Below are positions 1 through 41,707 of a stretch of DNA of 64,000 bases, one piece after another. Source of the DNA: Macrostomum lignano. Its lineage: Eukaryota. The stretch spans positions 1-64,000 of the forward strand of contig NIVC01001676.1 in assembly GCA_002269645.1 (NCBI GenBank). The letters are read 5' to 3'. Made by a program: the position numbers and the translations under genes. Under the pieces are notes generated by a model that searched no databases, was not told the DNA's origin, and was given only the letters and a program-made list of their open reading frames with translations. Positions within the stretch are counted from its first letter, which is position 1; each line of letters opens with the position of its first letter.

Positions 1-2
1 GG

Positions 3-1450: not shown

Positions 1451-1496
1451 TACTACTACTACTACTACTACTATACTACTACTACTACTACTACTA

Positions 1497-1539
<43 letters not shown>

Positions 1540-1603
1540 ATACAACAACAAACTACTACTACTACTACTACTACAACAAACTACTACTACTACTACTACT
1601 ACT
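1451..1603. repeat. (TAC)n trinucleotide microsatellite
   Basis: Direct reading, with a few interruptions; explains ORF 1422..1640. Confidence 0.97.
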
Positions 1604-2321: not shown

Positions 2322-4366
2322 ATGTCTCAAAGTGCAGCACCGGACGGTGGCTGGGCTGGATGGTGCTGCTGGCGGGTCACTGCATGCACATTCTGGCCGG
2401 CGGGCTCGACAGGCGTCTGGAGTGTTCTACAGGGAGATCCTCAAAGAGCTGCAGCAGTCTTCTGCCTCCACTGCCGGCTTCAGCGCTTTGCTGTTCGCTT
2501 CCAGGTTCATGAGCGGTGAGTGCATGGTTCAAGTTGCGTTTCAGATTAGATTAGATCAGATTAGAGATTTTAAGAGACTTCAGCGAAGACTGATCTAGAG
2601 CTTGTATTGTATTTGTCTGGCACACAACGTGAGTTATTCAGTTTCTGAGTCCTCCAGCAGCAAAAATGTTTACACCGATAACTTTCAGGCCCCATTACCG
2701 GCGTTCTCTGCAAGTATTTTGGCTGCCGCAGGGTCATGATGGCTGGAGGCCTCATATCCTTCGTCGGCATGCTGCTGAGCTCGTTCTGCCGCAGTCTGTC
2801 GCTCATCTACCTGACCCTCGGCTGCATGACGGGAGTCGGCAACGGCCTCGCCTACACTTCTGGCCTCTTGGCTGTCAACGACTACTTCAGCCGACGCAAG
2901 GCCACCGCCCTCGCTTGGCGACCGCGGGCACCGGAGTGGGCAGCTTCGTGCTGCCTCTGCTCACCCAGTACCTCATCCAGGTGTACTCATTCCGCGGCTG
3001 TATGCTCATTCTGAGCGGCCTGTCGCTCAATCTGGTGTGTGTGGCGCTCTGCTTTACCGCTGCCCGCTGAGAAGAACTTAGCAAATGGAGCACTCGAGGC
3101 CGAGGCTGCAGACGCGACTTCTGAGGCACTCATCGATACAGCAGGTCAGAGTGAAACCGCTGAAAACAAAAACTCCAAGGATTCCACCGGCGAGAAAGTC
3201 CTGGGCCAATCCATGACAACGATCAAGTCAAGGACGTCCCTGGAGCGAAGCGGTCGAGGCTTCTGCATGGAGCTGTGGGCCAACTTCGATCTGAAGCTGT
3301 TCCTCAATCCGTACTTCTGCTTGCTGGCCGCCGCCACTCTGTTCATCTCGTCGGGCTTCAAGTCCGTGGCGGTGATCCTGCCGCACCATGCGCAGCTTCG
3401 CGGTCTGGACGACATGACATCTGTTCTGCTCATATCCATATCCGGTAGGTTCGCATCAAGTATTTATTTAACTATGCATACTTCGTTTTGAAGACGGGTT
3501 TCGCCAAAACACACTACGGAAATAGGAGAGTTCAAATTAACTGCACTAGACGCGCAGTTCTGCACTGACAAGCTGTAAAATGCGCGATGTATGATCTATG
3601 TCCGACTTGCCTTCGATATTATGCTCGTATTATAGATTCGGTCAACATTCGATGCTCGTCCAAATGTATTGGTGTACTTGATGTAAATGTACTTAATTCC
3701 TATAACCCAAAGGCGATCGAAGGTTCGTAAGTCCATGCGGGACTTATGGTATAATAAGCGGATTCTTTCTGCAGTAGGACGTTGCGGTGAAAATTTACTG
3801 TTTTGGGTGCCGTTTTTTAGTGCAGAAATGACTTGATTTCTTTTTACCATCATAAAATTATGCACATTTTCTGCCTAGGCGCCTGCGACACTGTGTCCAG
3901 ATTCTCAGTGGGGCTGTTCTTCGACATCCCCCACCTGGTGCCGCACCGAAGGCGCATCTGGACACTCGGCATGCTGCTCACCGCCTCCAGCATCACAGCC
4001 TTCGTTTTCATGCAAAATTTAATACCGTTCATCCTGATCTCGGGAGCGTTCGGCCTGACCTCCGGGCTGTTCATGAGCCAGTTGTACTGCATGCTGATTG
4101 ACCTGATCGGCAGGGAGCGGTCCCGCTCCGGCATCGGCCTGCTGATCCTCTGCTTCGGCTTCGGCGTGGCCGTCGGACCGCCGACAGCGGGCGCGCTGAA
4201 GGACGTCACGGACACTTACCAGCTGTCATTCTGCGTGCTCGGCGCGTCCACCTTCGTCGGCTTCGTCTGTCTGTGCGCGCTGGACGTCGCGCTGATGACG
4301 CAGCGACGACAGCGACGGCGGCTGAACTTGAACCCTACCCTGGATATTTCCGTAGATCAAAAGTGA
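2322..4366 (+). CDS. Monocarboxylate transporter (MFS, SLC16/MCT family) paralog 2; exons 2322-2515, 2689-3444, 3879-4366; about five 1-nt frameshifts in exons 1-2
   Basis: MCT N-terminal motif PDGGWGW (restored by one G at ~2355), GPITGVLCKYFGCRRV, YFSRRKATALGLATAGTGVG, FDLKLFLNPYF, 12-TM-like hydrophobic pattern. Introns are GT-AG with phase 1/1 (2516-2688; 3445-3878). Confidence 0.9.
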
Positions 4367-5611
4367 CAAACCTTTCATTGCCACTTTTTCTTATTGATAG
4401 TAGCCCGATCAATACTAAGTGTCCAAGGCACAGATTCTAGTTTCACGGATTGCTAAATGCAATTTGGGAAACTACTGGGGCAAAACTGTTCTATGGTGCA
4501 TTAAAATGCCCAATGTCTGGGAAAATACTGGGCAGATCAGTCGAGATTCGAGCCAAGAGGTTTGGATGACAGTTTGACCTTTTGCCCGTTTCTGTGCCAA
4601 AAATTCAATTACCCATCTTGGTGTTTAGTACTGATCGGTAATAGGATGCTCGCTAAGAAACAAACATTTTTCCCGTGCCGCATTCCAGTGCCGCATCCAC
4701 CCATCATCAGTCATTAACTGATGCTAGTAACCGTTCAGAATACAACAAAACTAATAGGTGCTAAAACGAAGTAACTCGTAGAAGATATATTTTACTCGTA
4801 AATCTGAAAACAATAGCCAATCTTATTGTCAAAATTTATTCTAGACCTGCCTCGGTCGTGTGTTGAAGTTGACCATGATCGGCGCTACTGTCTTTTTACA
4901 CACTCATTTTAGTGTAGTGGACTAGCAACCTTGACACCCCGTTGGGCAGTCAACAAAGAAAGGGAAAAATTGATAAACTCTATATAGCTTTTGACCTTGT
5001 ACAGTCACTATTGCTAGTTTCTTAGGAAAAATGATGTTTAAATCAAAAAATTATCAGCCGTAAAAGTCAGTTGTCTAGCATGAGATATCAGCATCTTCTT
5101 CGAGTTTCGGCATCAAAGCCTCCTTTTAAGCTATGGCTTGACCCTAACTCTCCCGTTGATGCTTACCCTACCAACAACTCCCAATTGACCCTTTTGGCAT
5201 CCCCTCGATTTCAAAACTTAACGATTGTGATGATGTGAAAATTTTCGAGTTTATTGGATTTCACGCTTGTGAACCCTCGTGCTGCGCGTCTAGCCATTTT
5301 GACAGGAAAATTCCGTTTTCTTTCACTTAATTGACCGAATTTAAAGACTAATTGCAAGCATAAAGGCTCAATCTAGCTTAATTTAGGTCTGATTCTAGTT
5401 CTACCAGTTCGACTTTGTAGCGGAAAAATAAGTTTAATTCGGTGGCTCATTCCACGCATGTAGAGAAGACTTTATAACTTTTTAATGAGGAAGGACTGGG
5501 TAGATTCGGGCGTAGACAGCCTGCGAAATTTGTTTAATCAGTGCTGCAATTCACAATCACGTGGAACTTTTACCATAGGCGCCAAATAAGCGAGTCTAAG
5601 GGGTAGAGAGT

Positions 5612-5852
5612 GGGCTGGGCCGTAGCCCAGTGGTCTGGCGCGGTGCTCTTACGTGCCAGCGGCCCAGGCTCGATTCCAAATGCAGCCGCTGTACACTCCT
5701 GTGTGAGTGTGTGCCTGCGTACGTATCCGCGCGCTTGTGTGCCTGCTCAGGGGAGTCGGCGGAATGGGCAGCAATGCCTCTCGCTGGTTGTGTGACAATG
5801 TCGCTTAAAGTGCGCCAGGGTGCACACAGCCCCCAGCCCATAATAAAAAGGA
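5612..5852 (+). mobile_element. tRNA-derived SINE (family A) with probable 9-bp TSD
   Basis: A-box TAGCCCAGTGG 5623-5633, B-box GGCTCGATTCC 5667-5677, A-rich tail TAATAAAAAG ~5841-5850, direct repeat GTAGAGAGT at 5603-5611 and 5853-5861. Confidence 0.7.
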
Positions 5853-6789
5853 GTAGAGAGTTTGCTTTTAATAATCACGATCAGTGCTGACTAATTTGTA
5901 ATAATTAGTCATTTCTGATTTATTTTGGACTTTTTATTAAATATTTATTACGTAATTCAATTCCCGTTTGGCTGAGAAAACAAACAAGTCAAATCTATAT
6001 TCAAGTGGTCTCATATTTGGAGCTATAAAGGTCAAATGAATTCAGCATTTCCAAAGAAGATTCCTATCTAAAAAGTACAAAATCCCCAAAAAATAGTAGC
6101 TAAACATCATTTTCCTTTGGAGTCTAAAAATAGTGACTGTAGATTGAAAGTCTTAACCTATGTGTAGCTTATTCAAATGCGTTTAGATCCCTTTCTTAGC
6201 TGCCTCCCTAACTCCCGATTGGGGTCTCAATTTCCAATTCTGAGTGTCGAAGTAACGGTAGACGATACTACTGAATCAAAAGTAGCTTAATAGCATACGA
6301 GCTTTTGGTATTAAAATAAAAATACACTTTCATTTAAATTTTCTCGTCTATACATTCATACACTTTCATGTCCATAGTGGAGACGCAGATACTTTAAGTA
6401 GCAAGTAAGGCATTTTTCGAAATTTTTTATGTTACACAACTTAACAACTCTGAAAAGATGGAGAACTTCGACAGCTTTGTTTTTCTACTGTCTTTGTCTC
6501 TTAAAAATCTTAAAAATTTAGAAAGACCCAAGCATTTTGCCGCTTACTTTGGGGTACCTCAATATTTGACGAACTCAACCTACTGAGTTTTGGTTTCTGC
6601 CTGTCAATGTCTTGGACTGGGAGATTGGGAAGCTCCCCGAGAGAGACGGGATGAAGGCCTCTCCATGTGTTGTACCTTCCTCGGCCTTTTGAATAATTAA
6701 TTGATTTGTACGAGGGGTGGGCGCGTCCGGCTGAAGGGGATTAAATAAAGCTCTAGTGGGGCCGCTTAGCGGGGAGGCGGAAGCTGGAG

Positions 6790-9097
<2,308 letters not shown>

Positions 9098-14700: not shown

Positions 14701-16407
14701 TTCATGAGTGAGTTCATGAGTGAGTTCATGAGTGAGTTCATGAGTGAGAGAGTAAGTAAGTGAGTGAGTTCATGAGTGAGTTCATGAGTGAACTCATGAG
14801 GGAGTTCATGAGTGAGTTCATGAGTTCATGAGTTCATGAATGAGTGAGTGAGTGGGTGAGTGAGTGAGTGAGTGAGTGAGTGAGTGAGTGAGTGAGTGAG
14901 TGAGTGAGTGAGTGAGTGAGTGGGTGAGTGGGTGAGTGAGTGAGTGAGTGAGTGAGTGAGTGAGTGAGTGAGTGAGTGAGTGAGTGAGTGAGTGAGTGAG
15001 TGAGTGAGTGAGTGAGTGAGTGAGTGAGTGAGTGAGTGAGTGAGTGAGTGAGTGAGTGAGTGAGCAGGTACCTGCACAATGTACCGATACCGCCCCGCGA
15101 CGGTCTCCTGCAGCAGCAGGTCGGCCACTCCTCCCTGGCAGGGGATGACGCACAGCGGGCAGTTGACCGGCCGCAGTCCGCAGACCCCCATGGCGGCCCG
15201 GTTGCCATCGAAGTAGGCCGGCAGCCGGTGAAACTCGTCGAGGCTGAGCGGCCGGGCCAGCAGCTGCCAGTCAGGTCCGGCGCCCTCCGGCAGCAGCGGA
15301 TGGTGCGAGAAGGCCAGCCGGGCCGGGTCAGTCAGGAAGAAGAAGTCGTTCCGCTGGGGCACCGCCGCGGCGGCCACGGCGGCCTCCGAGGCCTCAGCGT
15401 CGGCCGCCAGCGGGAGGCCCGCCGAGCCCCAGATGGCATCGACGTGGCGCCACTCGCCGTCGATGAAGCAGGCAAACCAGGCGCCGCCGACGTGCGACCG
15501 ATGGCCGGTGGCATAGTTGGCGCCCTTCTTGAGGCCCTCCAGGCGCTGGCAGGGAACTCCGCTGAGGCTGAGTAGGAATGTGATGAAGAATTGAGAACTC
15601 TTCTGAGAACAAATCATTTTAGCGCCACAGCAACTACAGTGAATGATTTTCGCGCCACAACAACTACAAGTAAGTTATTTCGGCGCCACAACAACTACAG
15701 TAAGTTATTTCGGCGCCACAACAACTACAGTTTGCCGCCACAACAACTACAGTAAGTTATTTCGGCGCCATAACAACTACAGTTTGGCGTCACAACAACT
15801 ACAGTAAATGAAGATTTCGGCGCCACAACAACTTCAGTAAATGAAGATTTCGGCGCCACAACAACTTCAGTAAGGGATTTTGGCGCCACAACAGAACAGA
15901 CGCTCCTCACCTCATGACCGCCTCGAACACCTCGGACTGCCAGTCTGGCCGGCCGGCCGCCCGATCGGCCAGGCAGGGCAGCCGATGCAGCTCTCGGGGC
16001 CGCTCGGCCAGACGGCAGACGAGTCCGAAAGCGGCCACTGTCCGGTCCAGATCTTCCGGACAATCAGCAAAGAGGCGACGGCAGAGGCCGGCCAAGTCCG
16101 AACCGGATTGAAGGTCGAGAGTTCGAATCCTGGCCAGGCCGGCCTCGTACCTGGCCGGCTCCAGCAGTTCGGACTTCAGCCGGCTGGGCGGGAACGGCTG
16201 CGGCTTCTGCTGGGCGGAGGTCGGCGACGTCAGAGGCGGCTGGCCGCGGCTTCGCTGAAGCTGCTGCAGCCTGTCCGGCGTGGGAATTCCGCAGTCGGCC
16301 AGCGCGCCGGCCAGCTCTGAAGGCGAGGCCGGTAGGACGAACTCCTCCAGCGGGATTTCGTCCGGAGCGTAGCGGTAGTCGCTGTAGTAGCTGTGCTGCG
16401 GCAGCAT
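10579..16407 (-). CDS. KY/hillarin-like transglutaminase-fold protein fused to a C-terminal nucleoside-phosphorylase-like domain (~1296 aa); exons 16407-15911, 15567-15072, 14570-14189, 13956-13406, 13315-12559, 12455-12374, 11704-10579
   Basis: TGc-family segment SGVPCQRLEGLKKG...AWFACFIDGEWRHVDAIWG...NDFFFLTDPARLAFSHHP...WQLLARPLSLDEF, followed by beta-rich repeats (VHIRFPQPGNYLLDI). Six GT-AG introns with matching phases 2,0,1,0,1,2; exon sum 3891 nt is divisible by 3. Two acceptors have in-frame alternatives (15561, 14561). The start codon is uncertain. Confidence 0.75.
11797..12215. repeat. 30-bp intronic minisatellite (TTCCGGTTTAGCAGAACCGGGATCACTAAC)
   Basis: Direct reading; gives the 10-aa repeats in ORFs 11755-12252. 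Confidence 0.93.
13985..14180. repeat. 30-bp intronic minisatellite (GATGAGTCATAGAATGTACACTCTAGAACT)
   Basis: About six degenerate copies. Confidence 0.85.
14578..15064. repeat. (GAGT)n microsatellite grading into a 12-bp GAGTGAGTTCAT repeat
   Basis: Direct reading; fills the intron between 15072 and 14570. Confidence 0.97.
15618..15895. repeat. ~30-bp intronic minisatellite (GGCGCCACAACAACTACAGTAAGTTATTTC)
   Basis: About nine degenerate copies. Confidence 0.9.
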
Positions 16408-27140: not shown

Positions 27141-27692
27141 TAGAAAGAATCAGAACCAGAACATGGTTTCTAGCTGGTCATCCTTGATTCGGCATCCAGC
27201 CTCACAGCAGGTTACCCAACTCACCACATCGCACATCTCGGCCATCGCAGACACGCTCAGCGCCAGCAACAAGGCCCAGTGATTCACCGAGCGAGTAGCC
27301 ATCCGGATATTAAAGCTGTTCAGTTCAGTGCAAACTTCAGCAGGAAATTCTAATCCATGCAGAAACGGCTTGTTTGCACAGTTTCGACTCTATTAAAGCA
27401 GAGTTGATGGCTGATCGCCTCTCATTGGTCTCCGATATTGGTAGGGCAGCGAATGGGAGAAAGGATTGGGATTTAGCAAAAGGAAGAAAATGATGACGGG
27501 AAGGAAGGCGGTTCCTATAGCAACAACCAGGAGGCTTGGCAAGCTGTAATTACTATTTTAGGAGGCCAAAATCTTTTAATCTTTTAAAAGTTTTTGGCAT
27601 TTCTAAATACAACTTCGAGTGTATACCTCTTTTGCTTTTTTTCGACGTTGTTTATCGCATGTTTTTGCAAACTATCAGCCACGGAACTTCTC

Positions 27693-27999
27693 AATAATAA
27701 TAATAATAATAATTGATTATACCTGACCCAATTGGGCCAGATGTGCAACCGACAGCTCAGCCGCAGCTATTGCGCGGCGCATCTGAAGGCTGCGTACGGC
27801 TGTTCAGTCCAAGGACTGGGGGGGGTCGTCACACACATCCTCAATTACCCCAGCTAATGCTGGCACCCATTTTACAGCTGGGTGAACTGAAGCAATGCAG
27901 AGTTAAGTGTCTTGCTCAAATTGATCCAGTGGAATCAGGAATCGAACCCCCGACCTTCAAATCGTGAGTCCGACGCTCTAACCACTAGTCTACAACCCC
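27693..27999 (-). mobile_element. tRNA-derived CORE-type SINE (family B) with (ATT)n tail
   Basis: Minus strand: GGGGTTGTAGACTAGTGGTTAGAGCG (A-box), anticodon-like arm TCGGA-CTCACGA-TTTGA, B-box GGTTCGATTCC (27948-27938), then TTGAGCAAGACACTTAACTCTGCATTGCTTCAGTTCACCCAGCTGTAAATGGG resembling the CORE-SINE domain, ending in (ATT)n at 27713-27693. Confidence 0.85.
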
Positions 28000-30900
28000 T
28001 ACCACTAGGCTACAACCCCTACAACTAGGCTACAACCCCTACCACTAGTCTACAACCCCTACCACTAGTCTACAACCCCTACCACTAGGCTACAACCCTT
28101 CACTAGGCTACAACCCTTCACTAGGCTACAACCCCTACAACTAGGCTACAACCCCTACCACTAGGCTACAACCCCTACCACTAGACTACAACCCCTACCA
28201 CTAGGCTACAACCCCTACCACTAGACTACAACCCCTACCACTAGGCTACAACCCCTACAACTAGGCTACAACCCCTACCACTAGGCTACAACCCCTACCA
28301 CTAGGCTACAACCCCTACCACTAGGCTACAACCCCTACCACTAGTCTACAACCCCTACCACTAGGCTACAACCCCTACCACTAGGCTACAACCCCTACCA
28401 CTAGGCTACAACCCCTACAACTAGGCTACAACCCCTACAACTAGGCTACAACCCTTCACTAGGCTACAACCCCTACAACTAGGCTACAACCTTTCACTAG
28501 GCTACAACCCCTACAACTAGGCTACAACCCCTACCACTAGGCTACAACCCCTACAACTAGGCTACAACCCCTACCACTAGACTACAACCCCTACCACTAG
28601 GCTACAACCCCTACAACTAGGCTACAACCCCTACAACTAGGCTACAACCCTTCACTAGGCTACAACCCCTACAAATAGGCTACAACCCTTCACTAGGCTA
28701 CAACCCCTACCACTAGGCTACAACCCCTACAACTAGGCTACAACCCCTACCACTAGACTACAACCCCTACCACTAGGCTACAACCCCTACCACTAGACTA
28801 CAACCCCTACCACTAGGCTACAACCCCTACAACTAGGCTACAACCCCTACCACTAGGCTACAACCCCTACCACTAGGCTACAACCCCTACAACTAGGCTA
28901 CAACCCCTACAACTAGGCTACAACCCCTACCACTAGGCTACAACCCCTACAACTAGGCTACAACCCCTACAACTAGGCTACAACCCCTACCACTAGGCTA
29001 CAACCCCTACCACTAGGCTACAACCCCTACCACTAGGCTACAACCCCTACCACTAGGCTACAACCCCTACAACTAGGCTACAACCCTTCACTAGGCTACA
29101 ACCCCTACAACTAGGCTACAACCCTTCACTAGGCTACAACCCCTACAACTAGGCTACAACCCCTACCACTAGACTACAACCCCTACCACTAGGCTACAAC
29201 CCCTACAACTAGGCTACAACCCTTCACTAGGCTACAACCCCTACAAACTAGGCTACAACCCTTCACTAGGCTACAACCCCTACAACTAGTCTACAACCCT
29301 TCACTAGGCTACAACCCCTACAACTAGGCTACAACCCTTCACTAGGCTACAACCCCTACAACTAGGCTACAACCCTTCACTAGGCTACAACCCCTACAAC
29401 TAGGCTACAACCCCTACAACTAGGCTACAACCCCTACCACTAGGCTACAACCCCTACAACTAGGCTACAACCCTTCACTAGGCTACAACCCCTACAACTA
29501 GGCTACAACCCTTCACTAGGCTACAACCCCTACAACTAGGCTACAACCCTTCACTAGGCTACAACCCCTACAACTAGGCTACAACCCCTACCACTAGTCT
29601 ACAACCCCTACCACTAGTCTACAACCCCTACCACTAGGCTACAACCCTTCACTAGGCTACAACCCTTCACTAGGCTACAACCCCTACAACTAGGCTACAA
29701 CCCCTACCACTAGGCTACAACCCCTACCACTAGACTACAACCCCTACCACTAGGCTACAACCCCTACAACTAGGCTACAACCCCTACAACTAGGCTACAA
29801 CCCCTACAACTAGGCTACAACCCTTCACTAGGCTACAACCCCTACAACTAGGCTACAACCCCTACAACTAGGCTACAACCCCTACCACTAGGCTACAACC
29901 CCTACAACTAGGCTACAACCCCTACAACTAGGCTACAACCCCTACCACTAGGCTACAACCCCTACCACTAGGCTACAACCCCTACCACTAGGCTACAACC
30001 CCTACCACTAGGCTACAACCCCTACCACTAGGCTACAACCCCTACAACTAGGCTACAACCCTTCACTAGGCTACAACCCCTACAACTAGGCTACAACCCC
30101 TACAACTAGGCTACAACCCTTCACTAGGCTACAACCCCTACAACTAGGCTACAACCCCTACCACTAGGCTACAACCCCTACAACTAGGCTACAACCCCTA
30201 CCACTAGGCTACAACCCCTACAACTAGGCTACAACCCCTACCACTAGACTACAACCCCTACCACTAGGCTACAACCCCTACCACTAGGCTACAACCCCTA
30301 CCACTAGGCTACAACCCCTACAACTAGGCTACAACCCCTACAACTAGGCTACAACCCTTCACTAGGCTACAACCCCTACAAATAGGCTACAACCCTTCAC
30401 TAGGCTACAACCCCTACAACTAGGCTACAACCCCTACAACTAGGCTACAACCCTTCACTAGGCTACAACCCCTACAACTAGGCTACAACCCCTACCACTA
30501 GGCTACAACCCCTACCACTAGGCTACAACCCCTACCACTAGACTACAACCCCTACCACTAGGCTACAACCCCTACCACTAGGCTACAACCCCTACCACTA
30601 GTCTACAACCCCTACCACTAGGCTACCACCCCTACCACTAGGCTACAACCCCTACCACTAGGCTACAACCCCTACAACTAGGCTACAACCCCTACCACTA
30701 GACTACAACCCCTACCACTAGACTACAACCCCTACCACTAGGCTACAACCCCTACAACTAGGCTACAACCCCTACAACTAGGCTACAACCCTTCACTAGG
30801 CTACAACCCCTACAACTAGGCTACAACCCTTCACTAGGCTACAACCCCTACAACTAGGCTACAACCCCTACAACTAGGCTACAACCCCTACCACTAGGCT

Positions 30901-33514
30901 ACAACCCCTACAACTAGGCTACAACCCTTCACTAGGCTACAACCCCTACAACTAGGCTACAACCCTTCACTAGGCTACAACCCCTACAACTAGGCTACAA
31001 CCCTTCACTAGGCTACAACCCCTACAACTAGGCTACAACCCCTACCACTAGTCTACAACCCCTACCACTAGTCTACAACCCCTACCACTAGGCTACAACC
31101 CTTCACTAGGCTACAACCCTTCACTAGGCTACAACCCCTACAACTAGGCTACAACCCCTACCACTAGGCTACAACCCCTACCACTAGACTACAACCCCTA
31201 CCACTAGGCTACAACCCCTACAACTAGGCTACAACCCCTACAACTAGGCTACAACCCCTACAACTAGGCTACAACCCTTCACTAGGCTACAACCCCTACA
31301 ACTAGGCTACAACCCCTACAACTAGGCTACAACCCCTACCACTAGGCTACAACCCCTACAACTAGGCTACAACCCCTACAACTAGGCTACAACCCCTACC
31401 ACTAGGCTACAACCCCTACCACTAGGCTACAACCCCTACCACTAGGCTACAACCCCTACCACTAGGCTACAACCCCTACCACTAGGCTACAACCCCTACA
31501 ACTAGGCTACAACCCTTCACTAGGCTACAACCCCTACAACTAGGCTACAACCCCTACAACTAGGCTACAACCCTTCACTAGGCTACAACCCCTACAACTA
31601 GGCTACAACCTTTCACTAGGCTACAACCCCTACAACTAGGCTACAACCCCTACCACTAGGCTACAACCCCTACAACTAGGCTACAACCCCTACCACTAGA
31701 CTACAACCCCTACCACTAGGCTACAACCCCTACCACTAGGCTACAACCCCTACCACTAGGCTACAACCCCTACAACTAGGCTACAACCCCTACAACTAGG
31801 CTACAACCCTTCACTAGGCTACAACCCCTACAAATAGGCTACAACCCTTCACTAGGCTACAACCCCTACCACTAGGCTACAACCCCTACAACTAGGCTAC
31901 AACCCTTCACTAGGCTACAACCCCTACAACTAGGCTACAACCCCTACCACTAGGCTACAACCCCTACCACTAGGCTACAACCCCTACCACTAGACTACAA
32001 CCCCTACCACTAGGCTACAACCCCTACAACTAGGCTACAACCCCTACAACTAGGCTACAACCCTTCACTAGGCTACAACCCCTACAACTAGGCTACAACC
32101 CCTACAACTAGGCTACAACCCCTACCACTAGGCTACAACCCCTACCACTAGGCTACAACCCCTACCACTAGGCTACAACCCCTACCACTAGGCTACAACC
32201 CCTACAACTAGGCTACAACCCTTCACTAGGCTACAACCCCTACAACTAGGCTACAACCCTTCACTAGGCTACAACCCCTACAACTAGGCTACAACCCCTA
32301 CCACTAGACTACAACCCCTACCACTAGGCTACAACCCCTACAACTAGGCTACAACCCTTCACTAGGCTACAACCCCTACAAACTAGGCTACAACCCTTCA
32401 CTAGGCTACAACCCCTACAACTAGGCTACAACCCTTCACTAGGCTACAACCCCTACAACTAGGCTACAACCCTTCACTAGGCTACAACCCCTACAACTAG
32501 GCTACAACCCCTACAACTAGGCTACAACCCCTACCACTAGGCTACAACCCCTACAACTAGGCTACAACCCTTCACTAGGCTACAACCCCTACAACTAGGC
32601 TACAACCCTTCACTAGGCTACAACCCCTACAACTAGGCTACAACCCTTCACTAGGCTACAACCCCTACAACTAGGCTACAACCCCTACCACTAGTCTACA
32701 ACCCCTACCACTAGTCTACAACCCCTACCACTAGGCTACAACCCTTCACTAGGCTACAACCCTTCACTAGGCTACAACCCCTACAACTAGGCTACAACCC
32801 CTACCACTAGGCTACAACCCCTACCACTAGACTACAACCCCTACCACTAGGCTACAACCCCTACAACTAGGCTACAACCCCTACAACTAGGCTACAACCC
32901 CTACAACTAGGCTACAACCCTTCACTAGGCTACAACCCCTACAACTAGGCTACAACCCTTCACTAGGCTACAACCCCTACAAACTAGGCTACAACCCTTC
33001 ACTAGGCTACAACCCCTACAACTAGTCTACAACCCTTCACTAGGCTACAACCCCTACAACTAGGCTACAACCCTTCACTAGGCTACAACCCCTACAACTA
33101 GGCTACAACCCTTCACTAGGCTACAACCCCTACAACTAGGCTACAACCCCTACAACTAGGCTACAACCCCTACCACTAGGCTACAACCCCTACAACTAGG
33201 CTACAACCCTTCACTAGGCTACAACCCCTACAACTAGGCTACAACCCTTCACTAGGCTACAACCCCTACAACTAGGCTACAACCCTTCACTAGGCTACAA
33301 CCCCTACAACTAGGCTACAACCCCTACAACTAGGCTACAACCCCTACCACTAGGCTACAACCCCTACAACTAGGCTACAACCCTTCACTAGGCTACAACC
33401 CCTACAACTAGGCTACAACCCTTCACTAGGCTACAACCCCTACAACTAGGCTACAACCCTTCACTAGGCTACAACCCCTACAACTAGGCTACAACCCCTC
33501 ACTAGGCTCAACCC
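27981..33514 (-). repeat. 5.5-kb satellite of 18-20-bp units equal to the SINE 5' end/A-box (AGGGGTTGTAGCCTAGTGGT)
   Basis: + strand units CTACAACCCCTACCACTAGG, CTACAACCCCTACAACTAGG and CTACAACCCTTCACTAGG; the first unit is the SINE's own head. Confidence 0.97.
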
Positions 33515-34127
33515 AACTACATTGATTAATTCTCAATAACTTACGAGGAACTTATAAGACTGACATTTAAATTAAGCGATCAAACCTCACAAGCTCCTGT
33601 CGAGTCAGAGCTCCGTTTCATGTCCAGAGTATTGGCTTGAAGCCTCCATGTCCAGGGAGGTTTGATTGACAGAGCGAGTCGCTCAGGCTGTGGAGGCTCC
33701 GTCGCGACAAGGCGGCGACTTGGCTGGGCAATGCAAAAGCCATATTGAGCAATCTTGATGATGCGGCTCCAGCGGTGTAGATTTCAAGCTGAGATGCTGG
33801 ACGGAGAGAATCGATATGAATCAATCAGGTATTAAATCTTGCTGGCCCTGCTTCTCCTCAGCGCCCGAGCTGTGTGGCCTGCTTGCGATCTAAGAAATGC
33901 TAAAAGCACTGATTGACAGGTGCTTGTCGCGACTCAAAATATTTAGAGTCTTCGCCTCCGGCTTGAGAGATATTTGCGGAGAAAAACGCATAATTGTTAC
34001 TGAGAATGAGTAGGCAGCTGCGAATTTTTAACGAATAATGATACACTCAACTAAATTGATGCAGCAAAACCTTCAGAGATTTTCAAATATATGTTTAAAC
34101 GGTTCCTTCATTTTGACATAAAAATTC

Positions 34128-34333
34128 TGTAGACAGGGTATTGGGGTTCGAGGTTCTACATGTATAAACAGGGTATTTTTAATCTATTATATTCAGGGTA
34201 TTGGGGGTTCTATAGACAGGGTATTGGGTATTCTATAGACAGGGTATTGGGAGTTCTATAGACAGGGTATTGGGAGTTCTATAGACCGGATATTGGGGGT
34301 TCTATAGAGAGGGTATTGGGGGATCTGTAGACA
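34128..34333. repeat. ~23-bp degenerate minisatellite (TATAGACAGGGTATTGGGRGTTC)
   Basis: About eight copies. Confidence 0.85.
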
Positions 34334-34334
34334 A

Positions 34335-34370
34335 GGGTTGTAGCCTAGTGGTTAAAGCATTGGACTCAGT
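34335..34370 (+). mobile_element. Truncated tRNA-like head of SINE family B
   Basis: GGGTTGTAGCCTAGTGGTTAAAGCATTGGACTCA matches the minus-strand SINE head at 27999-27965; no B-box follows. Confidence 0.7.
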
Positions 34371-34375
34371 GCACA

Positions 34376-34440
34376 AGGTTAAAGCTTGGTTAAAGCAAGG
34401 TTAAAGCAAGGTTAAAGCCACACTCAAGGTTAAAGCTTGA
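34376..34440. repeat. Short GGTTAAAGC(AA) repeat continuing the SINE head
   Basis: Five more copies of GGTTAAAGC, identical to the D-loop segment at 34350-34358. Confidence 0.8.
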
Positions 34441-34983
34441 GTGTGGTTGGTGTAGAGTGGGGTTGGTGTAGAGTGGGGTAGGTGTAGAGTGGGGCTGGTT
34501 TAGAGTGGGGTTGGTGTAGAGTGGGGCTGGTGTAGAGTGGGGCTGGTTTAGAGTGGGGTTGGTGTAGAGTGGGGCTGGTGTAGAGTGGGGTTGGTGTACA
34601 GTGAGGTTGGTGTAGAGTGGGGTAGGTGTAGAGTGGGGCTGGTGTAAAGTGGGGTTGGTGTACAGTGGGGTTGATGTAGAGTGGGGTTGGTGTACAGTGG
34701 GGTTGGTGTACAGTGAGGTTGATGTAGAGTGGGGTTGGTGTACAGTGGGGTTGGTGTACAGTGGGGTTGATGTAGAGTGGGGTTGGTGTACAGTGGGGTT
34801 GGTGTACAGTGAGGTTGATGTAGAGTGGGGTTGGTGTACAGTGGGGCTGGTGTAGAGTGGGGTTGGTGTACAGTGGGGTTGGTGTACAGTGGGGTTGGTG
34901 TACAGTGGGGTTGGTGTACAGTGGGGCTGGTGTAGAGTGGGGTTGGTGTACAGTGGGGCTGGTGTAGAGTGGGGTTGGTGTAA
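34441..34983. repeat. 16-bp G-rich minisatellite (GTGTAGAGTGGGGTTG)
   Basis: About 34 copies; explains the PTPLYTN ORFs. Confidence 0.96.
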
Positions 34984-35575
34984 AGTCAAATTTCAAAGTT
35001 CAAAGTTCAAATTCAAATTCAAACCTTTTTTCGAAACAGCACACACGTTCTCATCCAAAGTAACAAATATTAGTTTATAATTAGAAAAGGAATTTTCCGG
35101 CATGCAGTTTATAACTGATGGTACATTATTTATAGTTTCCCAGATAAAAATGGATCAGGTGAGCAATTTTCGATGCAGGCGGCTTAGAGAGGATAGAAAA
35201 TCGATACTCGTATAAACTTGTAATTAATCAACAATAGAAAATAAAAATAATAATCAACGGAGAGGCAATTACGGGGCATGATAGGCTGATAATCGGGACA
35301 ACTTAGAAAGCGTAGTGAAGTAAAAGTAATAAAATTAATATCTTCTGATAAGAAAATAAGCTATTAATTCTAGTTTACCGCAGCGCAGATAAAAAATCTG
35401 CGTTAAAAGTTCAAGTACAAAAAGTTTTCTATATTCTTAGAACACCGCTGTTTTGAAGGCCGATTATTTTGCAATGGCAAAAATTCCTTATTTTAATGCA
35501 ATGATTCAAAAAACCATTCTATTCTCTCCTTGCAATTTTCTGTTTGGTTTCCAATCTAGTTAGAGCGGCCAAGGA

Positions 35576-38500
35576 TCACTGGATGACCAGAGGGTCCCTG
35601 GCTGCGAACAGGGGCTGAATATTAACGAATGGCTCCTTCTCGGTGGCCACGTGGTCGACCCGGAACCTGCGGCCCGGCGGGATGTCCTTGTCGCGGAGTC
35701 GCTCCCTGCGGCGGGGGAGATAATGGAAGACAGTGTCAGGCTGATGAAGATTATATTTATCGTATGATAGAAACGAGAAACGATAAACTCACCTGTACAC
35801 CTGCTGCTGGCCGTGCGATAGGCGAGCCTCAGTCTTGGACACGAAGTCGTTGGTGTGAGCGTTCACGTGAGCCGTGTCCTCCTGGCGCTGGATGTCGTAG
35901 CGGCCCGGCCCGACTTGGTTCTACGGGTCAAGGTTGAGTCAGTAAGTCAAGTTGGTCAAGTGAGACAGTTGGGTCAGTGGGTCAGATATTAGGTGGACTA
36001 TCGTGGTTGAGTTTGAAATTTGTTTTCAATTGTTCTTAGACCAAGGCCAACCTTCCAAATAACTGAAAGCGGGTTTTCCTCATATTTTCGAAGGATACAA
36101 TCAGAATCTAGCCCCGGGGTTTGTTTCCACGGAAATTCCACGGATTTCCCGTCGAAACTTACGAAGTTCTTTGTAAAGAACATTAGCGAACGCTTGTCCT
36201 GCCTGTTTGAAGTGCTCAAGAAGCCGGCTTCGCTCTTGGAGAAAGACTCCTTCTTGAAGTTTGGATCGGTCGGGTGGTAGGAGGCAGCGGAGACCTTGTT
36301 CTGAAATTTTCAATATAAACATGAGATTAACTTTAAAAATAAAGTTTACTATGAGTACCGTATGTAGCATTTCAAAGGAAGGAGTTAAGATTTAATTATC
36401 ATTAGATAGAAGATTTTTAGAGATTAGGGGAATCCCAAAGAGTATTTCGGGAGGCTGGGGAATCCCAGAGAGTATTTCTGGAGGCTGGGGAATCCAGAGA
36501 GCATCACAGGAGGCTGGGGAATCCCAGAGAGTATTTCTGGAGGCTGGGGAATCCAGAGAGCATCACAGGAGGCTGGGGAATCCCAGAGTATTTCAGGAGG
36601 CTGGGGAATCCAGAGAGTATCCCAGGAGGCTGGGGAATCCCAGAGAGTATCCCAGGAGGCTGGGGAATCCCAGAGAGTATCCCAGGAGGCTGGGGAATCC
36701 CAGAGAGTATCACAGGAGGCTGGGGAATCCCAGAGAGTATCACAAGAGCCTGGGAATCTCAGAGAGTATCACAGGAGGCTGGGGAATGCAGATAATATTT
36801 CGGGAGGCTGGGGAATCCCAGAGAGTATCACAAGAGCCTGGGGAATCTCAGAGAGGATCACAGGAGGCTGGGGAATGCAGATAATATTTCGGGAGGCTGG
36901 GGAATCCCAGAGAGTATTTCGGGAGGCTAGGGAATCCCAGAGAGCATCACAGGAGGCTGGGGAATGTTACCGTGGGATCAGGTGGCACAGTGGCAGGCGT
37001 CATCCAGTAGATTCGGTCGCACGGCTTGGCCGGGTACTGCACCATCTTGAGGAATTTGCCGTGGTTGCGCTTCTCCGGCCTATTGAGATCGGCCACGCCG
37101 TCTTTAAAGTTGTACTGGCCTGGGCCCAGGTTGCCGGTTGACATGCGAGCGTAGTGTCCGGTTTTTACCGGCTGGTCCCTGAGCCGTTGTGGATGAGTAA
37201 GGCGATGAAGTTTTATATACGGTTTTCATAGTCACGTGACTCTGGACCAGTTAAGCTACGCGATCCGTCTCTGAATGTACACCACCCCTGTCCCATTGAA
37301 TGTACATCATCGCTGCCCCACTGAATGTACACCATCGTCTATCCCTGTCCCACTGAATGTACACCATCCCTGCCCCACTGAATGTACAACATCCCTACCC
37401 CACTGATGTACACCACCCTTGTCCGACTGAATGTACACCACCCCTGTCCGACTGAATGTACACCATCTCTGCCTCAGTGAATGGAATGAAAAATAATAAG
37501 ACGACTATCTAGTCATTTCAGACACCGGTCCCGTACCCCAACAGAACGCAAGCCTCACCGATCCAATGAGAAAACTTCGTAGGGGCCTCGGGAATTCTTT
37601 CCAGCCTTCTTAGCCGCTAGCAGGTCCGTGAAGCTGGGGATCTGGTAGGTGCCCGGCCCGAGGTCGGTTCCCTGCTGGGGCGGGGCGCGGCTGCCGCCGC
37701 AGTCGAGCATGCCGACCCGGCCGCAGTGGCGCCGTTTCTCATCCATCTCCTCCTTGTGCAGATGTGGCACGCCGCTTTTTCCGTAGCTGCCGGGACCCGG
37801 GTTGCCCTCCTGCCCGGTGTGGCCGCGGAACCGGGGCTCCCGGGCTTCCAGGAGGCCGCGCTTTGATACCTGGGGGAGTTTTATTGGTTCATTCAAATCG
37901 ATAGTTCTTTTATATTGATTTTCTGACCGAAATCTTTGTTTCATCAGTCAGCCTTCAATCGGTTTTTGTAAATATCAATTTCCTGAAATCGCTAAAGTCC
38001 TTTGCTACGAGACAGACAGAGACAGATCTCCGTTCATTTGGTGTTCGTGAGAGCGAACGATTCTCTGGCTGACCTCATTTCTACCTACATTTTCCGGGCT
38101 CCTGTCGGGGTTTTATCGATTTTCTTATCAGTGTACGTGTCTCTCTCATTTTCTGCCCCCCCCCTAACCCCGGCGCAAGCGCCTGTCGCTTTGAGGTGGG
38201 TGAATTTTTATCGATTTTCTTATCAATGTACATGTCCCTCCCTCTGATTTTCTGCCCCCTAACCCCCGCACAAGCGATGGGTGAATTTTTATCGATTTTC
38301 ATATATGGTGCATCCCCAACTCTTCTCTATCTCTCTCTAATCATCGGCCTGCACTTTTGTTTTACTGACTTGTTAGTTGTTGCTAAAAACTTTAAAATAC
38401 CAAATAAAGCTAGATTACTACACAGCTCAACATCAGGAGAGGTGAAAAAGTCATTAATTTGCTGTGTATACATGTATATTGAGCACTTGAGCTAAAGTTA

Positions 38501-40105
38501 GATCAGCATTTTCTTAATAGATTCTATCCAAATAACAGCTTCAGGCACCTCTAGCCGGTAGTCCTGCGATCCAGCTACATCATAGTATCCGGGTCCCAGC
38601 TTCCGCTTCTGTTCCTCTTTCTCGGCGTGCTGCTCTTTGTACAGCAGATGCGGAATCTGGCTTTGTCTGTGCACATCGTAGGCCCGCTTCCAGTTGGGAC
38701 CCTGGGCTCGTGAGGCGACTCTTTTGTCGCTGAACTCGTTGTATTGGAGCACATCGTAGCTGCCTGGGCCGAGGTCCTGTTAAATTAGTCCGAGCGAGTG
38801 TTGTTTTGTTTTAAATTAAAAATAAAAAGGCGTAAATATGCTCGTATTATAACAAAACTCACGGCGCTGATTCCACCAGGCACTTGAGTCAGAGTTCCCG
38901 GCAGTTTCCGCTTGGGATGAATTCCGGACACGTCGAATCTGTTTATTTTACCGATTCGGTAATTCCGGATTTATTTGACGAGTAAATAATAAAAAACAAA
39001 TTGAATTATAGCAACTATAACTAAAAATCGGTAGCTAATTCAGTGGTAATATAAACGTACGAGCTAGTATGGCTATAGTTCTAAGGGAGGGGTGCAAAAA
39101 ATCAATCGGTTGCAACTTTCAGCATTTAAAAAGTGTTTTGCTACTTTTATTACTAGTACTAGCCTATTAATTCTCATGCATTGTTAATCAAGTATCAAAT
39201 GATAATAGAGCTCATCAGCTAAAGCAGATTTTTTTCAGACTGATTTACTATACTCATGTGTGTAGAGTGCGCGGCTGTATGACTGGAATTTTAAAATGAT
39301 ATCACCTTATCAATTCAAATAGAATTGAATGTCACGAAACTCTCATTTCAACAAGAAACCCATCGAATTAGTTAACCTACTAATTCCAATTTTTTATTTC
39401 TCATGGGTCTTTCACTGAAGAAATAAAGATATTTGCTTGAAAGGTGTAATGAGAAATGTAGCTACTATCATTTGTGTTCGCATTGATAAAAAGAGACACT
39501 CCAGACACCTGAAAGTAAAAGTGCAGATATTAGCATTAAAAATAAGTTTTTACTTAAGACAAAAATCTCACATCTGTCTTATGTATGATACGAGACAGAT
39601 TATCGTATTATAAACAAATTATTCACAGATTTTTCGCATTCACTGAACTTACAGGAGAAAAACTGCAACCAATCAGAATAATTTTAATCAAAAAAGTATA
39701 TTTAAACAATTGTTTTGAAACATGTAAAAAAACATTGCAGTGTGCTTTGAAGTAAAATATTTTTCACAAAAAATTCTGTTTTCACCTTCACCATATTAAA
39801 AAAACATCTACGAACTTGTAAGTAACATTTTGATGCACTTAAATTTAGTAAAAGTACACATTCATGAGAATAAAAATACTCATTAACTGGCTTAAAAACA
39901 TAAAATGTAATAACACAACATTCCCTAATTTCCCTTTTAAAAGGAATTTTTAGCATTATAAATACGAAGATAACAGACTGCAGTCGTGAAGACAATGCAA
40001 AATTATGTTTTTGGTTATTTTTAGAATGAGTTTTTTTACTTACCGTGTTGACTGAAAACCGAAAGGAGCGCCGCTATACCCCTTTTTATCTTTTTCTGAA
40101 CTCAT
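35576..40105 (-). CDS. LEXM: Lymphocyte expansion molecule / ciliary microtubule-associated protein 2-like (PGPGxY repeat protein), 426 aa; exons 40105-40044, 38938-38863, 38776-38549, 37869-37559, 37178-36971, 36300-36163, 35920-35793, 35705-35576
   Basis: YSGAPFGFQSTRFDVSGIHP...LGPGSY...KLGPGYY...KRGLL..EPRFRG...NPGPGSYG...DLGPGTY...RGPYEVFSLDR...GHY...HGKFLK...DRIYW...VGPGRY, collinear with LEXM/C1orf177 as recalled. Seven GT-AG introns with matching phases; exon sum 1281 nt. Confidence 0.88.
36428..36965. repeat. ~28-29-bp intronic minisatellite (GGAGGCTGGGGAATCCCAGAGAGTATCAC)
   Basis: About 19 copies in a LEXM intron. Confidence 0.94.
37270..37485. repeat. ~24-bp intronic minisatellite (CTGAATGTACACCAYCCCTGYCCCA)
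   Basis: About eight degenerate copies. Confidence 0.85.
38110..38305. repeat. Degenerate ~85-100-bp tandem repeat in LEXM intron
   Basis: TTTTATCGATTTTC(T)TATCA recurs three times, with CTGCCCCC(C)TAACCCC...CAAGCG twice. Confidence 0.65.
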
Positions 40106-41167: not shown

Positions 41168-41707
41168 CTAGTTGTCACCTTCGACAGTTGAAGGAGCAGC
41201 AGCTTCTGCCAAGCCAAACAGCCGGCAGGTGTTGGCAAAAGCCGCCGATGCCACCTTCTCGGCTGGCTGGCCCAAGGTGGCCGCCACCACCTGCAGCACC
41301 TGCAGAATGCAAGCCGGCTCGTTTCGGCCCTTCACCATGCAGCCGGGCGACCAGCGCTCCGCTTTGCGCGACTCGAACCTCGAACTGGGGGTCACGTGAC
41401 TATGACCGGCGTGGCTGGGCTTCACCTCGCACCAGGGCGCGTCCGTCTCCAGTAGCAGACGATCCAGCGGCAGGCCGGACACCACGCGGAGATTGTCGGC
41501 GGTCTTCAGGCTGCACCCGTTCAGGCCGAGATAGAACCCCATGGCCAGCAGCTCGGCCGCGTCCTTCGCCGAGCCGTCGAAGGTGTGCACAACGCCTGGC
41601 GGCGAGGGCAGCTGGTTGGCGAATTCGGACAGCACAGCTCGGAATTCAGCGTGGCTGGCGCGGCAGTGCAGGAACAGCGGCAGGCGCAGCTGGCAGGCCA
41701 GGGACAC
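41168..41707 (-). CDS. TATDN1: TatD-family deoxyribonuclease, terminal exon (upstream exons outside window)
   Basis: LPLFLHCRAS...GVVHTFDGS...GFYLGLNGCSLKT...LPLDRLLLETDAPWCEVKPSHA...VKGRNEP matches the eukaryotic TATDN1 C-terminal half. Polypyrimidine CCCAG acceptor precedes 41707. Confidence 0.93.
   Translation of the reverse strand: MSLACQLRLPLFLHCRASHAEFRAVLSEFANQLPSPPGVVHTFDGSAKDAAELLAMGFYLGLNGCSLKTADNLRVVSGLPLDRLLLETDAPWCEVKPSHAGHSHVTPSSRFESRKAERWSPGCMVKGRNEPACILQVLQVVAATLGQPAEKVASAAFANTCRLFGLAEAAAPSTVEGDN

What the first reader, a model, noticed from the sequence alone, without database searches (positions are those of the whole stretch)
27688..33539. A 5.5-kb satellite born from a SINE's Pol III A-box, caught inside the SINE's target-site duplication
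Seen: the 20-bp unit (minus strand AGGGGTTGTAGCCTAGTGGT) is the first ~19 nt of the adjoining tRNA-derived SINE and contains its A-box (TAGCCTAGTGG). The SINE's own head is unit 1, so roughly 280 A-box-like copies lie head-to-tail upstream of one B-box. The 10-mer TTCTCAATAA occurs at the SINE tail (27688-27697) and just past the far end of the array (33530-33539), as expected of a TSD pushed apart by expansion after insertion. Known: TFIIIC binds A/B boxes, and TE-derived satellites exist but usually from longer segments. Inference: a snapshot of satellite birth from a promoter element, possibly acting as a TFIIIC/Pol III landing array, insulator or G-quadruplex tract (GGGG every ~20 nt).
Basis: partly seen in the sequence, partly recalled or inferred. 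Interest (0 to 1): 0.8.

Follow-up and report, generated by a model that had tools for sequence, protein, structure and literature searches.

The report
SINE-head minisatellite inside one insertion
In a flatworm (Macrostomum lignano-like) genome, the first 20 bases of one tRNA-derived SINE copy have been amplified about 280-fold into a 5.5-kb tandem array still enclosed by that copy's target-site duplication; this is a clean but probably neutral example of a satellite arising from a transposon.

Summary
TRF finds a 20-bp array at 27981-33514 (283 copies). Its unit, AGGGGTTGTAGCCTAGTGGT on the minus strand, equals nt 1-20 of the adjoining 303-bp SINE. TTCTCAATAA occurs only twice in the window, once at the SINE tail and once 15 nt beyond the array.

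The SINE has a tRNA-like head (Rfam tRNA 25.5 bits, below the threshold of 29), an exact B box, a MIR/CORE-like body and a (TTA)n tail. An independent copy (L001, 90% identical) has a single head unit, so the array is not part of the family consensus. The host is Macrostomum lignano or a near relative. 58% of the window is tandem repeat.

The array holds base-perfect blocks of up to 854 bp repeated 1.45 kb apart, which points to recent growth by unequal exchange.

The functional ideas fail the tests I could run:
- Only 76 of 281 units keep the A-box consensus.
- There is one B box.
- No G-quadruplex motif is present (G-runs are 15-16 nt apart).
- Folding is no stronger than in shuffled sequence.

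The closest known kind is the SINE-derived satellites of squamates (Vassetzky 2023), which have 67-215-nt units. Here the unit is 20 nt, comes from the extreme 5' end, and the locus is TSD-bounded. I read it as a new variant of a known kind, of moderate interest. Neither the empty site nor a genome-wide census could be reached.

The parts
27688..27697 (.). Left copy of the 10-bp direct repeat TTCTCAATAA, the putative TSD on the 3' side of the minus-strand element. Its last TAA is in phase with the SINE tail.
   Evidence: 2 copies in the window, 0.06 expected; 0.36% of shuffles, 1 of 943 control pairs.
27698..27712 (-). SINE 3' tail, (TTA)5 on the sense strand.
27713..27929 (-). SINE body and 3' region. 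It includes a CORE-like domain at 27866-27919 and TAATCAAT at 27712-27719 just before the tail.
   Evidence: 90% identity over 310 bp to the independent copy L001. CORE-like match to a MIR consensus recalled from memory: 76% over 55 nt, score 46 against shuffles 17+-2.3.
27930..28000 (-). tRNA-derived SINE head. B box GGTTCGATTCC at 27938-27948; A box TAGACTAGTGG at 27982-27992 (one mismatch to TRGCNNAGTGG); anticodon-loop-like CTCACGA. SINE nt 1 (A) is at 28000.
   Evidence: Rfam RF00005 25.5 bits, E=0.004, model positions 1-71.
28001..33514 (-). Minisatellite of 281 units of 20 or 18 nt, each a copy of SINE nt 1-20. Three main variants. AC 38-bp dimers dominate the distal end; head-identical units are enriched next to the SINE. 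Internal base-perfect blocks include 854 bp at offset 1454 bp (29303-30156 = 30757-31610).
33515..33529 (-). 15-nt junction segment, sense strand TTAATCAATGTAGTT. It consists of 8 nt identical to the SINE's pre-tail TAATCAAT, followed by what looks like the end of a partial unit.
   Evidence: Origin unresolved.
33530..33539 (.). Right copy of TTCTCAATAA, the putative TSD on the 5' side of the element.

Best explanation
A CORE-type, tRNA-derived SINE of about 303 bp with a (TTA)n tail inserted by LINE-mediated target-primed reverse transcription into TTCTCAATAA. The host is a Macrostomum lignano-like genome. The SINE's 5'-terminal 20 nt cover the tRNA acceptor 5' strand and the D-arm up to the GG of the D loop, which is the A-box region. 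This segment was first duplicated a few times. The small array then grew in place to about 5.5 kb by replication slippage and, mainly, unequal sister-chromatid or homologue exchange of multi-unit blocks. Variant units and a 38-bp dimer pattern arose during that growth.

The result is a single-locus SINE-derived minisatellite. It is most likely a neutral by-product of a genome that expands short tandem repeats very readily, and not a Pol III/TFIIIC or G4 device.

Shown here: the unit equals SINE nt 1-20; an unexpanded relative exists; a flanking 10-bp repeat is present; recent block duplications occurred; the A-box consensus has been lost in most units. Inferred: the order of events (insertion first, expansion afterwards), the recombinational mechanism, and neutrality.
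For: The unit matches SINE nt 1-20 and no other array in the window does. The independent SINE copy L001 carries exactly one head unit. The 10-bp direct repeat is unique to the two ends, its left copy abuts the tail in phase, and it is significant. Base-perfect internal blocks of 854, 571, 559 and 405 bp lie at offsets of 1.45-3.7 kb, and a 43-unit string recurs 74 units apart. This is the signature of recent unequal exchange. Head-identical units make up 23 of 41 in the SINE-proximal seventh and 6 of 40 in the distal seventh. The host context favours expansion: at least 19 distinct arrays and 58% tandem repeat in the window. The 95.6%-identical M. lignano block L002 differs 4-fold and 2-fold in copy number at two shared microsatellites. 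PMC5730564 reports 15% simple and tandem repeats in the genome. Against a function: 76 of 281 units keep the A-box consensus, there is one B box, no G4 motifs, and fold z-scores run from -1.2 to +0.7. The same anatomy, an array plus a longer terminal unit reaching the SINE terminus with alternating subvariants, is described for squamate sSats (PMC10702118).
Against: The distal end is not TSD followed by SINE nt 1. It reads TSD, TTAATCAATGTAGTT, then a degenerate unit. A simple in-place expansion of a canonical insertion does not predict this. No empty or unexpanded orthologous site could be retrieved, so the order of events is untested. Only one other family copy was found, so the family's usual head structure rests on a single sequence. 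Perfect internal blocks could in part be assembly artefacts. Neutrality is argued from missing motifs, not from any assay.
Confidence: 0.68

Rival explanations
1. The composite was copied as one piece. An array already sat upstream of a source SINE, or in a tandem SINE arrangement. A read-through transcript was retrotransposed with 5' truncation, so the TSD encloses an array that was born elsewhere. This would resemble an SVA-type composite carrying an internal VNTR. A weaker version has the reverse transcriptase re-copy the RNA's 5'-terminal 20 nt during insertion, seeding the array.
For: The distal edge begins with a partial unit preceded by 8 nt (TAATCAAT) identical to the SINE's own pre-tail sequence. 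That is what a 5'-truncated longer template or a template switch could leave. The sense strand of the whole 5.8-kb element has no TTTT, so Pol III read-through would not be terminated. The unit boundary coincides with SINE nt 1.
Against: The only other family copy has a single head. A 5.8-kb template is unusual for a SINE. Perfect blocks of up to 854 bp show that the array was remodelled very recently whatever its origin. The 8-nt match was noticed after the fact. No second composite locus was found, although no flatworm genome could be searched.
Confidence: 0.17
2. The array is a functional element: a TFIIIC/Pol III landing platform, a chromatin insulator, or a G-quadruplex tract.
For: 76 exact A-box consensus matches against 1.8 expected in the window. 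Strong strand asymmetry, GC skew -0.63. GGGG runs recur regularly.
Against: 73% of units have lost the A-box consensus, and the resident head itself has a mismatch. There is a single B box, whereas TFIIIC recruitment and ETC/insulator sites depend on the B box (established knowledge, not tested here). There are zero G4 motifs with loops up to 7 or up to 12 nt, and G-run spacing is 15-16 nt. Folding is not above shuffles. The array looks like one of many minisatellites in the region.
Confidence: 0.05
3. Coincidence or artefact. The 10-mer pair is a chance repeat and the SINE landed next to, or recombined with, an unrelated satellite. Alternatively, the array length and structure are assembly artefacts.
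For: The right 10-mer does not abut the array (15-nt gap). AT-rich 10-mers are commoner than average. Long tandem arrays are error-prone in assemblies.
Against: The unit is identical to SINE nt 1-20 and in phase with the head. The 10-mer is unique to these two sites, p about 0.001-0.004, and its left copy abuts the tail exactly.
Confidence: 0.07

Closest known systems
SINE-derived satellites (sSat1/2/3) of squamate reptiles (Vassetzky, Kosushkin & Ryskov 2023, Mob DNA; PMC10702118)
   Same: Both are tandem arrays whose unit is a portion of a tRNA-related SINE. One terminal unit extends to the SINE terminus. Loci reach hundreds to about 1000 units. Locus-specific subvariants often alternate as dimers or trimers, and longer arrays are more homogeneous.
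   Different: Squamate units are 67-215 nt and usually include the B box, body or LINE-derived region, and they occur at tens to thousands of loci. Here the unit is 20 nt, from the extreme 5' end (A-box region only). A single locus is known, the host is a flatworm, and the array is demonstrably enclosed by a putative TSD, which that study did not analyse.
Minisatellites/VNTRs inside retrotransposons, e.g. the VNTR of hominid SVA and the tandem promoter monomers of the mouse L1 5' UTR (from general knowledge, not tested)
   Same: A short internal or 5' segment of a non-LTR retroelement is reiterated head-to-tail and varies in copy number. In mouse L1 the reiterated unit is promoter sequence.
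   Different: SVA and L1 arrays belong to the mobile consensus and are propagated by retrotransposition. Here the one other family copy lacks the array, so the expansion looks locus-specific. The A-box units also lack the B box needed for a type-2 Pol III promoter.
CORE-SINE superfamily (Gilbert & Labuda 1999; members listed in PMC4824008)
   Same: tRNA-derived head followed by a central domain resembling the MIR CORE (76% over 55 nt), then a variable 3' region with a simple-repeat tail. CORE-SINEs are reported from vertebrates, lancelet, octopus and bivalves, with 66-70% identity between CORE domains.
   Different: The CORE comparison used a MIR consensus recalled from memory, not a curated library. 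The partner LINE was not identified. No flatworm CORE-SINE was found in the papers read.
tRNA-related tandem families of amphibians (PolIII/TAN of Cynops, OAX/satellite I of Xenopus, Rana/polIII), as reviewed in PMC10702118
   Same: Tandem repeats that contain tRNA-like Pol III promoter sequence.
   Different: Those units are 200-360+ nt, contain a whole tRNA-like gene and can be transcribed. No parent SINE is known for them. Here the parent SINE is attached and the unit is only a quarter of the tRNA-like head.

Membership tests
tRNA-derived SINE | Head related to tRNA with internal Pol III A and B boxes | tested here: met
   Rfam tRNA over the full model, 25.5 bits, E=0.004, below the gathering score of 29. 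B box is exact. The A-box consensus is exact in L001 and in 76 units, with one mismatch in the resident head. ARAGORN is negative, as expected for a degenerate head.
tRNA-derived SINE | Short non-coding element with a simple-repeat 3' tail and target-site duplication | tested here: met
   303 bp, (TTA)5 tail, 10-bp direct repeat.
tRNA-derived SINE | Dispersed multi-copy family | tested here: inconclusive
   One independent copy was found (L001, 90% identity over 310 bp, different flanks). There is none in the 23 kb of L002 and no second full copy in the window. No flatworm genome could be searched.
tRNA-derived SINE | 3' region shared with a partner LINE | not tested
   No LINE library was available.
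CORE-SINE superfamily | Conserved CORE central domain (about 45-65 bp) | tested here: inconclusive
   76% over 55 nt, score 46 against shuffles 17+-2.3 with a maximum of 30.
SINE-derived satellite (sSat sensu PMC10702118) | Tandem repeat unit homologous to part of a SINE | tested here: met
   The unit equals SINE nt 1-20.
SINE-derived satellite (sSat sensu PMC10702118) | Longer terminal unit continuing to the SINE terminus | tested here: met
   The array runs in phase into the complete SINE through to its tail.
SINE-derived satellite (sSat sensu PMC10702118) | Satellite-like behaviour: many loci, homogenisation between loci, heterochromatic or subtelomeric location | not testable with these tools
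   Only this locus is visible. Scans of metagenome, prokaryote-genome and viral collections found no array, but those collections hold no flatworm genome.
Minisatellite / VNTR | Unit of about 10-100 bp, array of about 0.5-30 kb, variant units interspersed | tested here: met
   20/18-bp units, 5.5 kb, three main variants with higher-order blocks.
TFIIIC-bound ETC / tDNA-type insulator | B-box motif(s) as the TFIIIC anchor | tested here: not met
   GGTTCGATTCC occurs once, in the SINE head, and never in the array.
G-quadruplex tract | Four G3+ runs with short loops (up to 7 nt, relaxed up to 12 nt) | tested here: not met
   0 motifs on the G-rich strand; spacing 15-16 nt.
Mobile composite retrotransposon with internal VNTR (SVA-like) | Array is part of the transposed unit at several loci with different TSDs | not testable with these tools
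   Only one locus is available, and the other family copy lacks the array.

The most novel reading that the evidence does not exclude
The array was not a slow in-place accident but is coupled to retrotransposition. In one version, the partner LINE's reverse transcriptase repeatedly re-copied the RNA's 5'-terminal 20 nt. The unit starts exactly at SINE nt 1, and the distal end is a partial unit plus 8 nt of SINE 3' sequence, which could be a template-switch scar. In the other version, an array-plus-SINE composite is itself a mobile, SVA-like element in Macrostomum. Either would make SINE heads a systematic seed of the unusually abundant minisatellites of this genome. A second head fragment at 34336-34370 is also flanked by arrays, one of which reiterates its own D-arm 9-mer.
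Probability: 0.12. Interest if true: 0.6.

Novelty: new variant of a known kind. Interest (0 to 1): 0.35.

Why it matters
TE-to-satellite transitions are usually inferred from sequence similarity between dispersed elements and mature satellites. Loci that still show the parent element, the array and the insertion boundaries together are rare. This locus gives a dated frame, a TSD-bounded single insertion, in which to measure how fast a minisatellite grows and diversifies. It extends SINE-derived tandem repeats from squamates to a flatworm and down to a 20-nt unit. It also suggests one concrete source for the very high minisatellite load that makes Macrostomum genomes hard to assemble. It does not, on present evidence, reveal a new regulatory device.

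Tried and rejected
1. Orthologous or empty site. The window matches M. lignano NIVC01002123.1 at 95.6% only over window 1-7221, and homology ends at the (CAGA)n array. Protein-anchored retrieval near the SINE failed: the STPGR-like ORF at 37555-37944 had no hits, which used the last homology search.

2. More SINE copies. The antisense 84-aa ORF gave one hit (L001). A metagenome scan with the 18-mer head returned 11 loci, all unrelated tRNA-like heads with single copies and no arrays. Scans of genome contigs and viral contigs for the SINE body and for the unit junction found nothing. These collections hold no flatworm genome, so the negatives carry little weight.

3. Neighbouring arrays as head derivatives. 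I tested whether the 23-mer, 11-mer and 16-mer arrays at 34.2-35.0 kb also derive from the SINE head. They are not significant against this SINE's head (p = 0.09, 0.14 and 0.41). The 11-mer does reuse GGTTAAAGC from the local head fragment.

4. G-quadruplex and hairpin structure. Both rejected.

5. Rfam at gathering threshold and ARAGORN. No hits. Only the permissive Rfam search shows the tRNA relationship.

6. Simple lag autocorrelation of the array was uninformative because 18- and 20-nt units are mixed. It was replaced by unit-string and exact-run analysis.

7. Literature search for a Macrostomum satellitome or SINE description found nothing specific.
Full report
**What is in the sequence**

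TRF reports one array at 27981-33514 with period 20, 282.9 copies, 89% matches and 4% indels. Read on the minus strand and split at a fixed anchor, it has 281 units:
- 109 of GTTGTAGCCTAGTTGTAGGG
- 75 of GTTGTAGCCTAGTGGTAGGG
- 60 of an 18-mer, GTTGTAGCCTAGTGAAGG
- 16 and 10 of two single-base variants (GTAGTCTAG and GTAGACTAG)
- a few singletons

The array runs in phase into a 303-bp element at 27698-28000 (minus strand). The sense strand of this element begins AGGGGTTGTAGACTAGTGGTTAGAGCGTCGGACTCACGATTTGAAGGTCGGGGGTTCGATTCC and ends in (TTA)5.

**The element is a tRNA-derived SINE**

- With permissive thresholds, the Rfam tRNA model matches 27930-27999 (-) over its whole length (1-71) at 25.5 bits, E=0.004. 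This is below the gathering score of 29.
- At the gathering threshold Rfam finds nothing, and ARAGORN finds no tRNA. This fits a degenerate head.
- The B box GGTTCGATTCC is exact at 27938-27948.
- The head's A box, TAGACTAGTGG, has one mismatch to TRGCNNAGTGG.
- The body at 27866-27919 resembles the CORE domain of MIR: 76% over 55 nt, score 46 against 17+-2.3 for shuffles. That superfamily is known from vertebrates, lancelet, octopus and bivalves (PMC4824008).

**An unexpanded relative exists**

The SINE's antisense 84-aa ORF hit one database protein. Its contig, L001, comes from an ENA metagenome assembly and is 861 bp. It carries an independent copy of the SINE, 90% identical over 310 bp, with unrelated flanks. 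That copy has exactly one head. Its alignment to the window's SINE starts at AGGGGTTG, preceded by unrelated sequence.

So the 20-nt unit AGGGGTTGTAGCCTAGTGGT is nt 1-20 of the family sequence, and the array is not a family feature. This rests on a single second copy. Of 19 tandem-repeat consensus units in the window, only this one is significantly similar to the head (z=10; all others p>=0.07).

**The flanking repeat**

TTCTCAATAA occurs exactly twice in 64 kb, at 27688-27697 and 33530-33539, against 0.06 expected. A shared word of 10 nt or more between the two 40-46-nt flanks arises in 0.36% of shuffles. It arises in 1 of 943 control window pairs taken at the same spacing. The left copy abuts the tail, and its terminal TAA is in phase with the tail. 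This is what priming of a (UUA)n tail on a nicked target would leave (inference).

The right copy does not abut a canonical SINE 5' end. The sense strand reads TSD, TTAATCAATGTAGTT, GGGTTGAGCCTAGTGA, then GGGGTTGTAGCC.... TGTAG(TT) looks like the end of a unit. TAATCAAT is identical to the 8 nt that precede the SINE's own tail, and these are the only two copies on that strand in the window. I could not explain this. It is the main point in favour of the rival in which a longer template that already carried repeats was copied with 5' truncation or a template switch.

**How the array grew**

The string of unit types contains a 43-unit stretch repeated exactly 74 units away. It also contains stretches of 29, 28 and 20 units repeated 158, 84 and 191 units away. 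At base level there are perfect repeats:
- 854 bp at offset 1454 bp (29303-30156 = 30757-31610)
- 571 bp at offset 3097 bp
- 559 bp at offset 1643 bp
- 405 bp at offset 3736 bp

This is the pattern expected from recent unequal exchange of multi-unit blocks, not from one-unit slippage alone. The distal end is dominated by a 38-bp dimer (20-mer plus 18-mer). Head-identical units are 23 of 41 in the seventh of the array next to the SINE and 6 of 40 in the distal seventh. Only the outermost distal unit is degenerate, so the array looks young.

**Host and context**

An MFS-transporter exon at 3833-4366 hit a Macrostomum lignano protein. Window 1-7221 aligns at about 95.6% to M. lignano contig NIVC01002123.1 (L002). 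The published assembly contains 180 Mb of duplicated blocks at 95% identity or more, and 15% simple and tandem repeats (PMC5730564). The window is therefore M. lignano or a very close relative, probably a duplicated block or another haplotype.

58% of the window is tandem repeat, or 35% if the array of more than 22 kb at its right end is set aside. Between the window and L002, (TAC)n is 50 against 196 copies and (CAGA)n is 147 against 73 copies. Homology stops at the (CAGA)n array. Rapid tandem-repeat turnover is thus the local norm, which makes a neutral origin the default.

**Tests of the proposed functions**

- A-box array: only 76 array units match TRGCNNAGTGG. The two commonest other unit types have lost the GG (AGTTG, AGTGA). 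There is one B box. By established knowledge, TFIIIC is anchored by the B box, and extra-TFIIIC and insulator sites are B-box sites. I did not test binding.
- G-quadruplex: no motif with loops up to 7 or up to 12 nt; G3+ runs are 15-16 nt apart.
- Secondary structure: DNA folds of 120-nt samples of either strand have z-scores from -1.2 to +0.7.
- One neutral observation: the sense strand of the whole 5.8-kb element has no TTTT, so Pol III read-through would not be stopped.

**Comparison with known systems**

The closest precedent is the SINE-derived satellites of squamate reptiles (PMC10702118).

Shared features:
- arrays whose unit is a portion of a tRNA-related SINE
- typically a longer terminal unit reaching the SINE terminus
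- up to about 1000 units
- alternating locus-specific subvariants
- greater homogeneity in longer loci

Differences:
- squamate units are 67-215 nt
- squamate sSats occur at tens to thousands of loci
- TSDs were not examined in that study

The present case has the same anatomy with a 20-nt unit from the extreme 5' end, in a flatworm, at a single visible locus, with both insertion boundaries preserved. It also fits the ordinary definition of a minisatellite. From general knowledge, internal VNTRs of SVA and the tandem promoter monomers of mouse L1 are analogous. Those belong to the mobile consensus, which this array apparently does not.

**What could not be done**

No flatworm genome is searchable with these tools. 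Scans of the metagenome, prokaryote-genome and viral collections found only unrelated tRNA-like heads or nothing. The orthologous or homeologous site could not be reached. The order 'insertion, then expansion', the family-wide frequency of head arrays, and the existence of SINE-free 20-mer arrays therefore remain untested.

**Verdict**

The 'satellite born from a SINE head inside its TSD' reading is the best-supported explanation (about 0.68). A composite-template or RT-coupled origin is a live rival (about 0.17). The TFIIIC, insulator and G4 ideas are not supported. This is a new variant of a known kind, of moderate interest (0.35).

Noticed in passing
34336-34436 (+): A second tRNA-like SINE head fragment, GGGTTGTAGCCTAGTGGTTAAAGCATTGGACTCAG (87% to nt 1-31 of the SINE, no B box), sits between a 23-mer array (34194-34338) and a 16-mer array (34439-34986). 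An 11-mer array next to it reiterates the fragment's own GGTTAAAGC: 6 copies within 34350-34436, none elsewhere, 0.57 expected. This may be a second, smaller case of a head segment being amplified.
   Followed up: partly
33521-33528 and 27712-27719: TAATCAAT (sense strand) occurs immediately inside the right TSD copy and again as the last 8 nt of the SINE before its tail. These are the only two copies on that strand in the window. It could be a template-switch or 5'-truncation scar, or coincidence.
   Followed up: partly
41783-64000: An array of more than 22 kb of the 23-mer AAGACTCTGAGCAGCCCAACCTG (97% matches, about 980 copies) runs off the window end. It is free of stop codons for up to 15.7 kb on the minus strand. 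It abuts a TatD-DNase-like exon at 41168-41707 (-).
   Followed up: no
window 1-7525 vs L002 12918-20689: The window is 95.6% identical to M. lignano NIVC01002123.1 over 7.2 kb. (TAC)n is 50 against 196 copies and (CAGA)n is 147 against 73 copies. Homology ends at the (CAGA)n array, and different minisatellites follow in each sequence.
   Followed up: partly
L001 (ENA ERZ28655790, scaffold_137897) 249-555: A 90%-identical copy of this flatworm SINE lies on an 861-bp contig of a deposited 'metagenome' assembly. This implies Macrostomum-like or related animal DNA in that sample.
   Followed up: no
16108-16132 (+): A B-box-containing tRNA-like fragment, GATTGAAGGTCGAGAGTTCGAATCC (88% to SINE nt 36-60), lies inside a GC-rich (about 60%) ORF-dense block at 10.5-16.4 kb that has no Pfam hits.
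   Followed up: no
37555-38752 (-): ORFs with GPGSY/GPGTY/GPGYY motifs look like exons of a sperm-tail PG-rich-repeat (STPGR-like) gene, judged by eye. They had no database hit.
   Followed up: no
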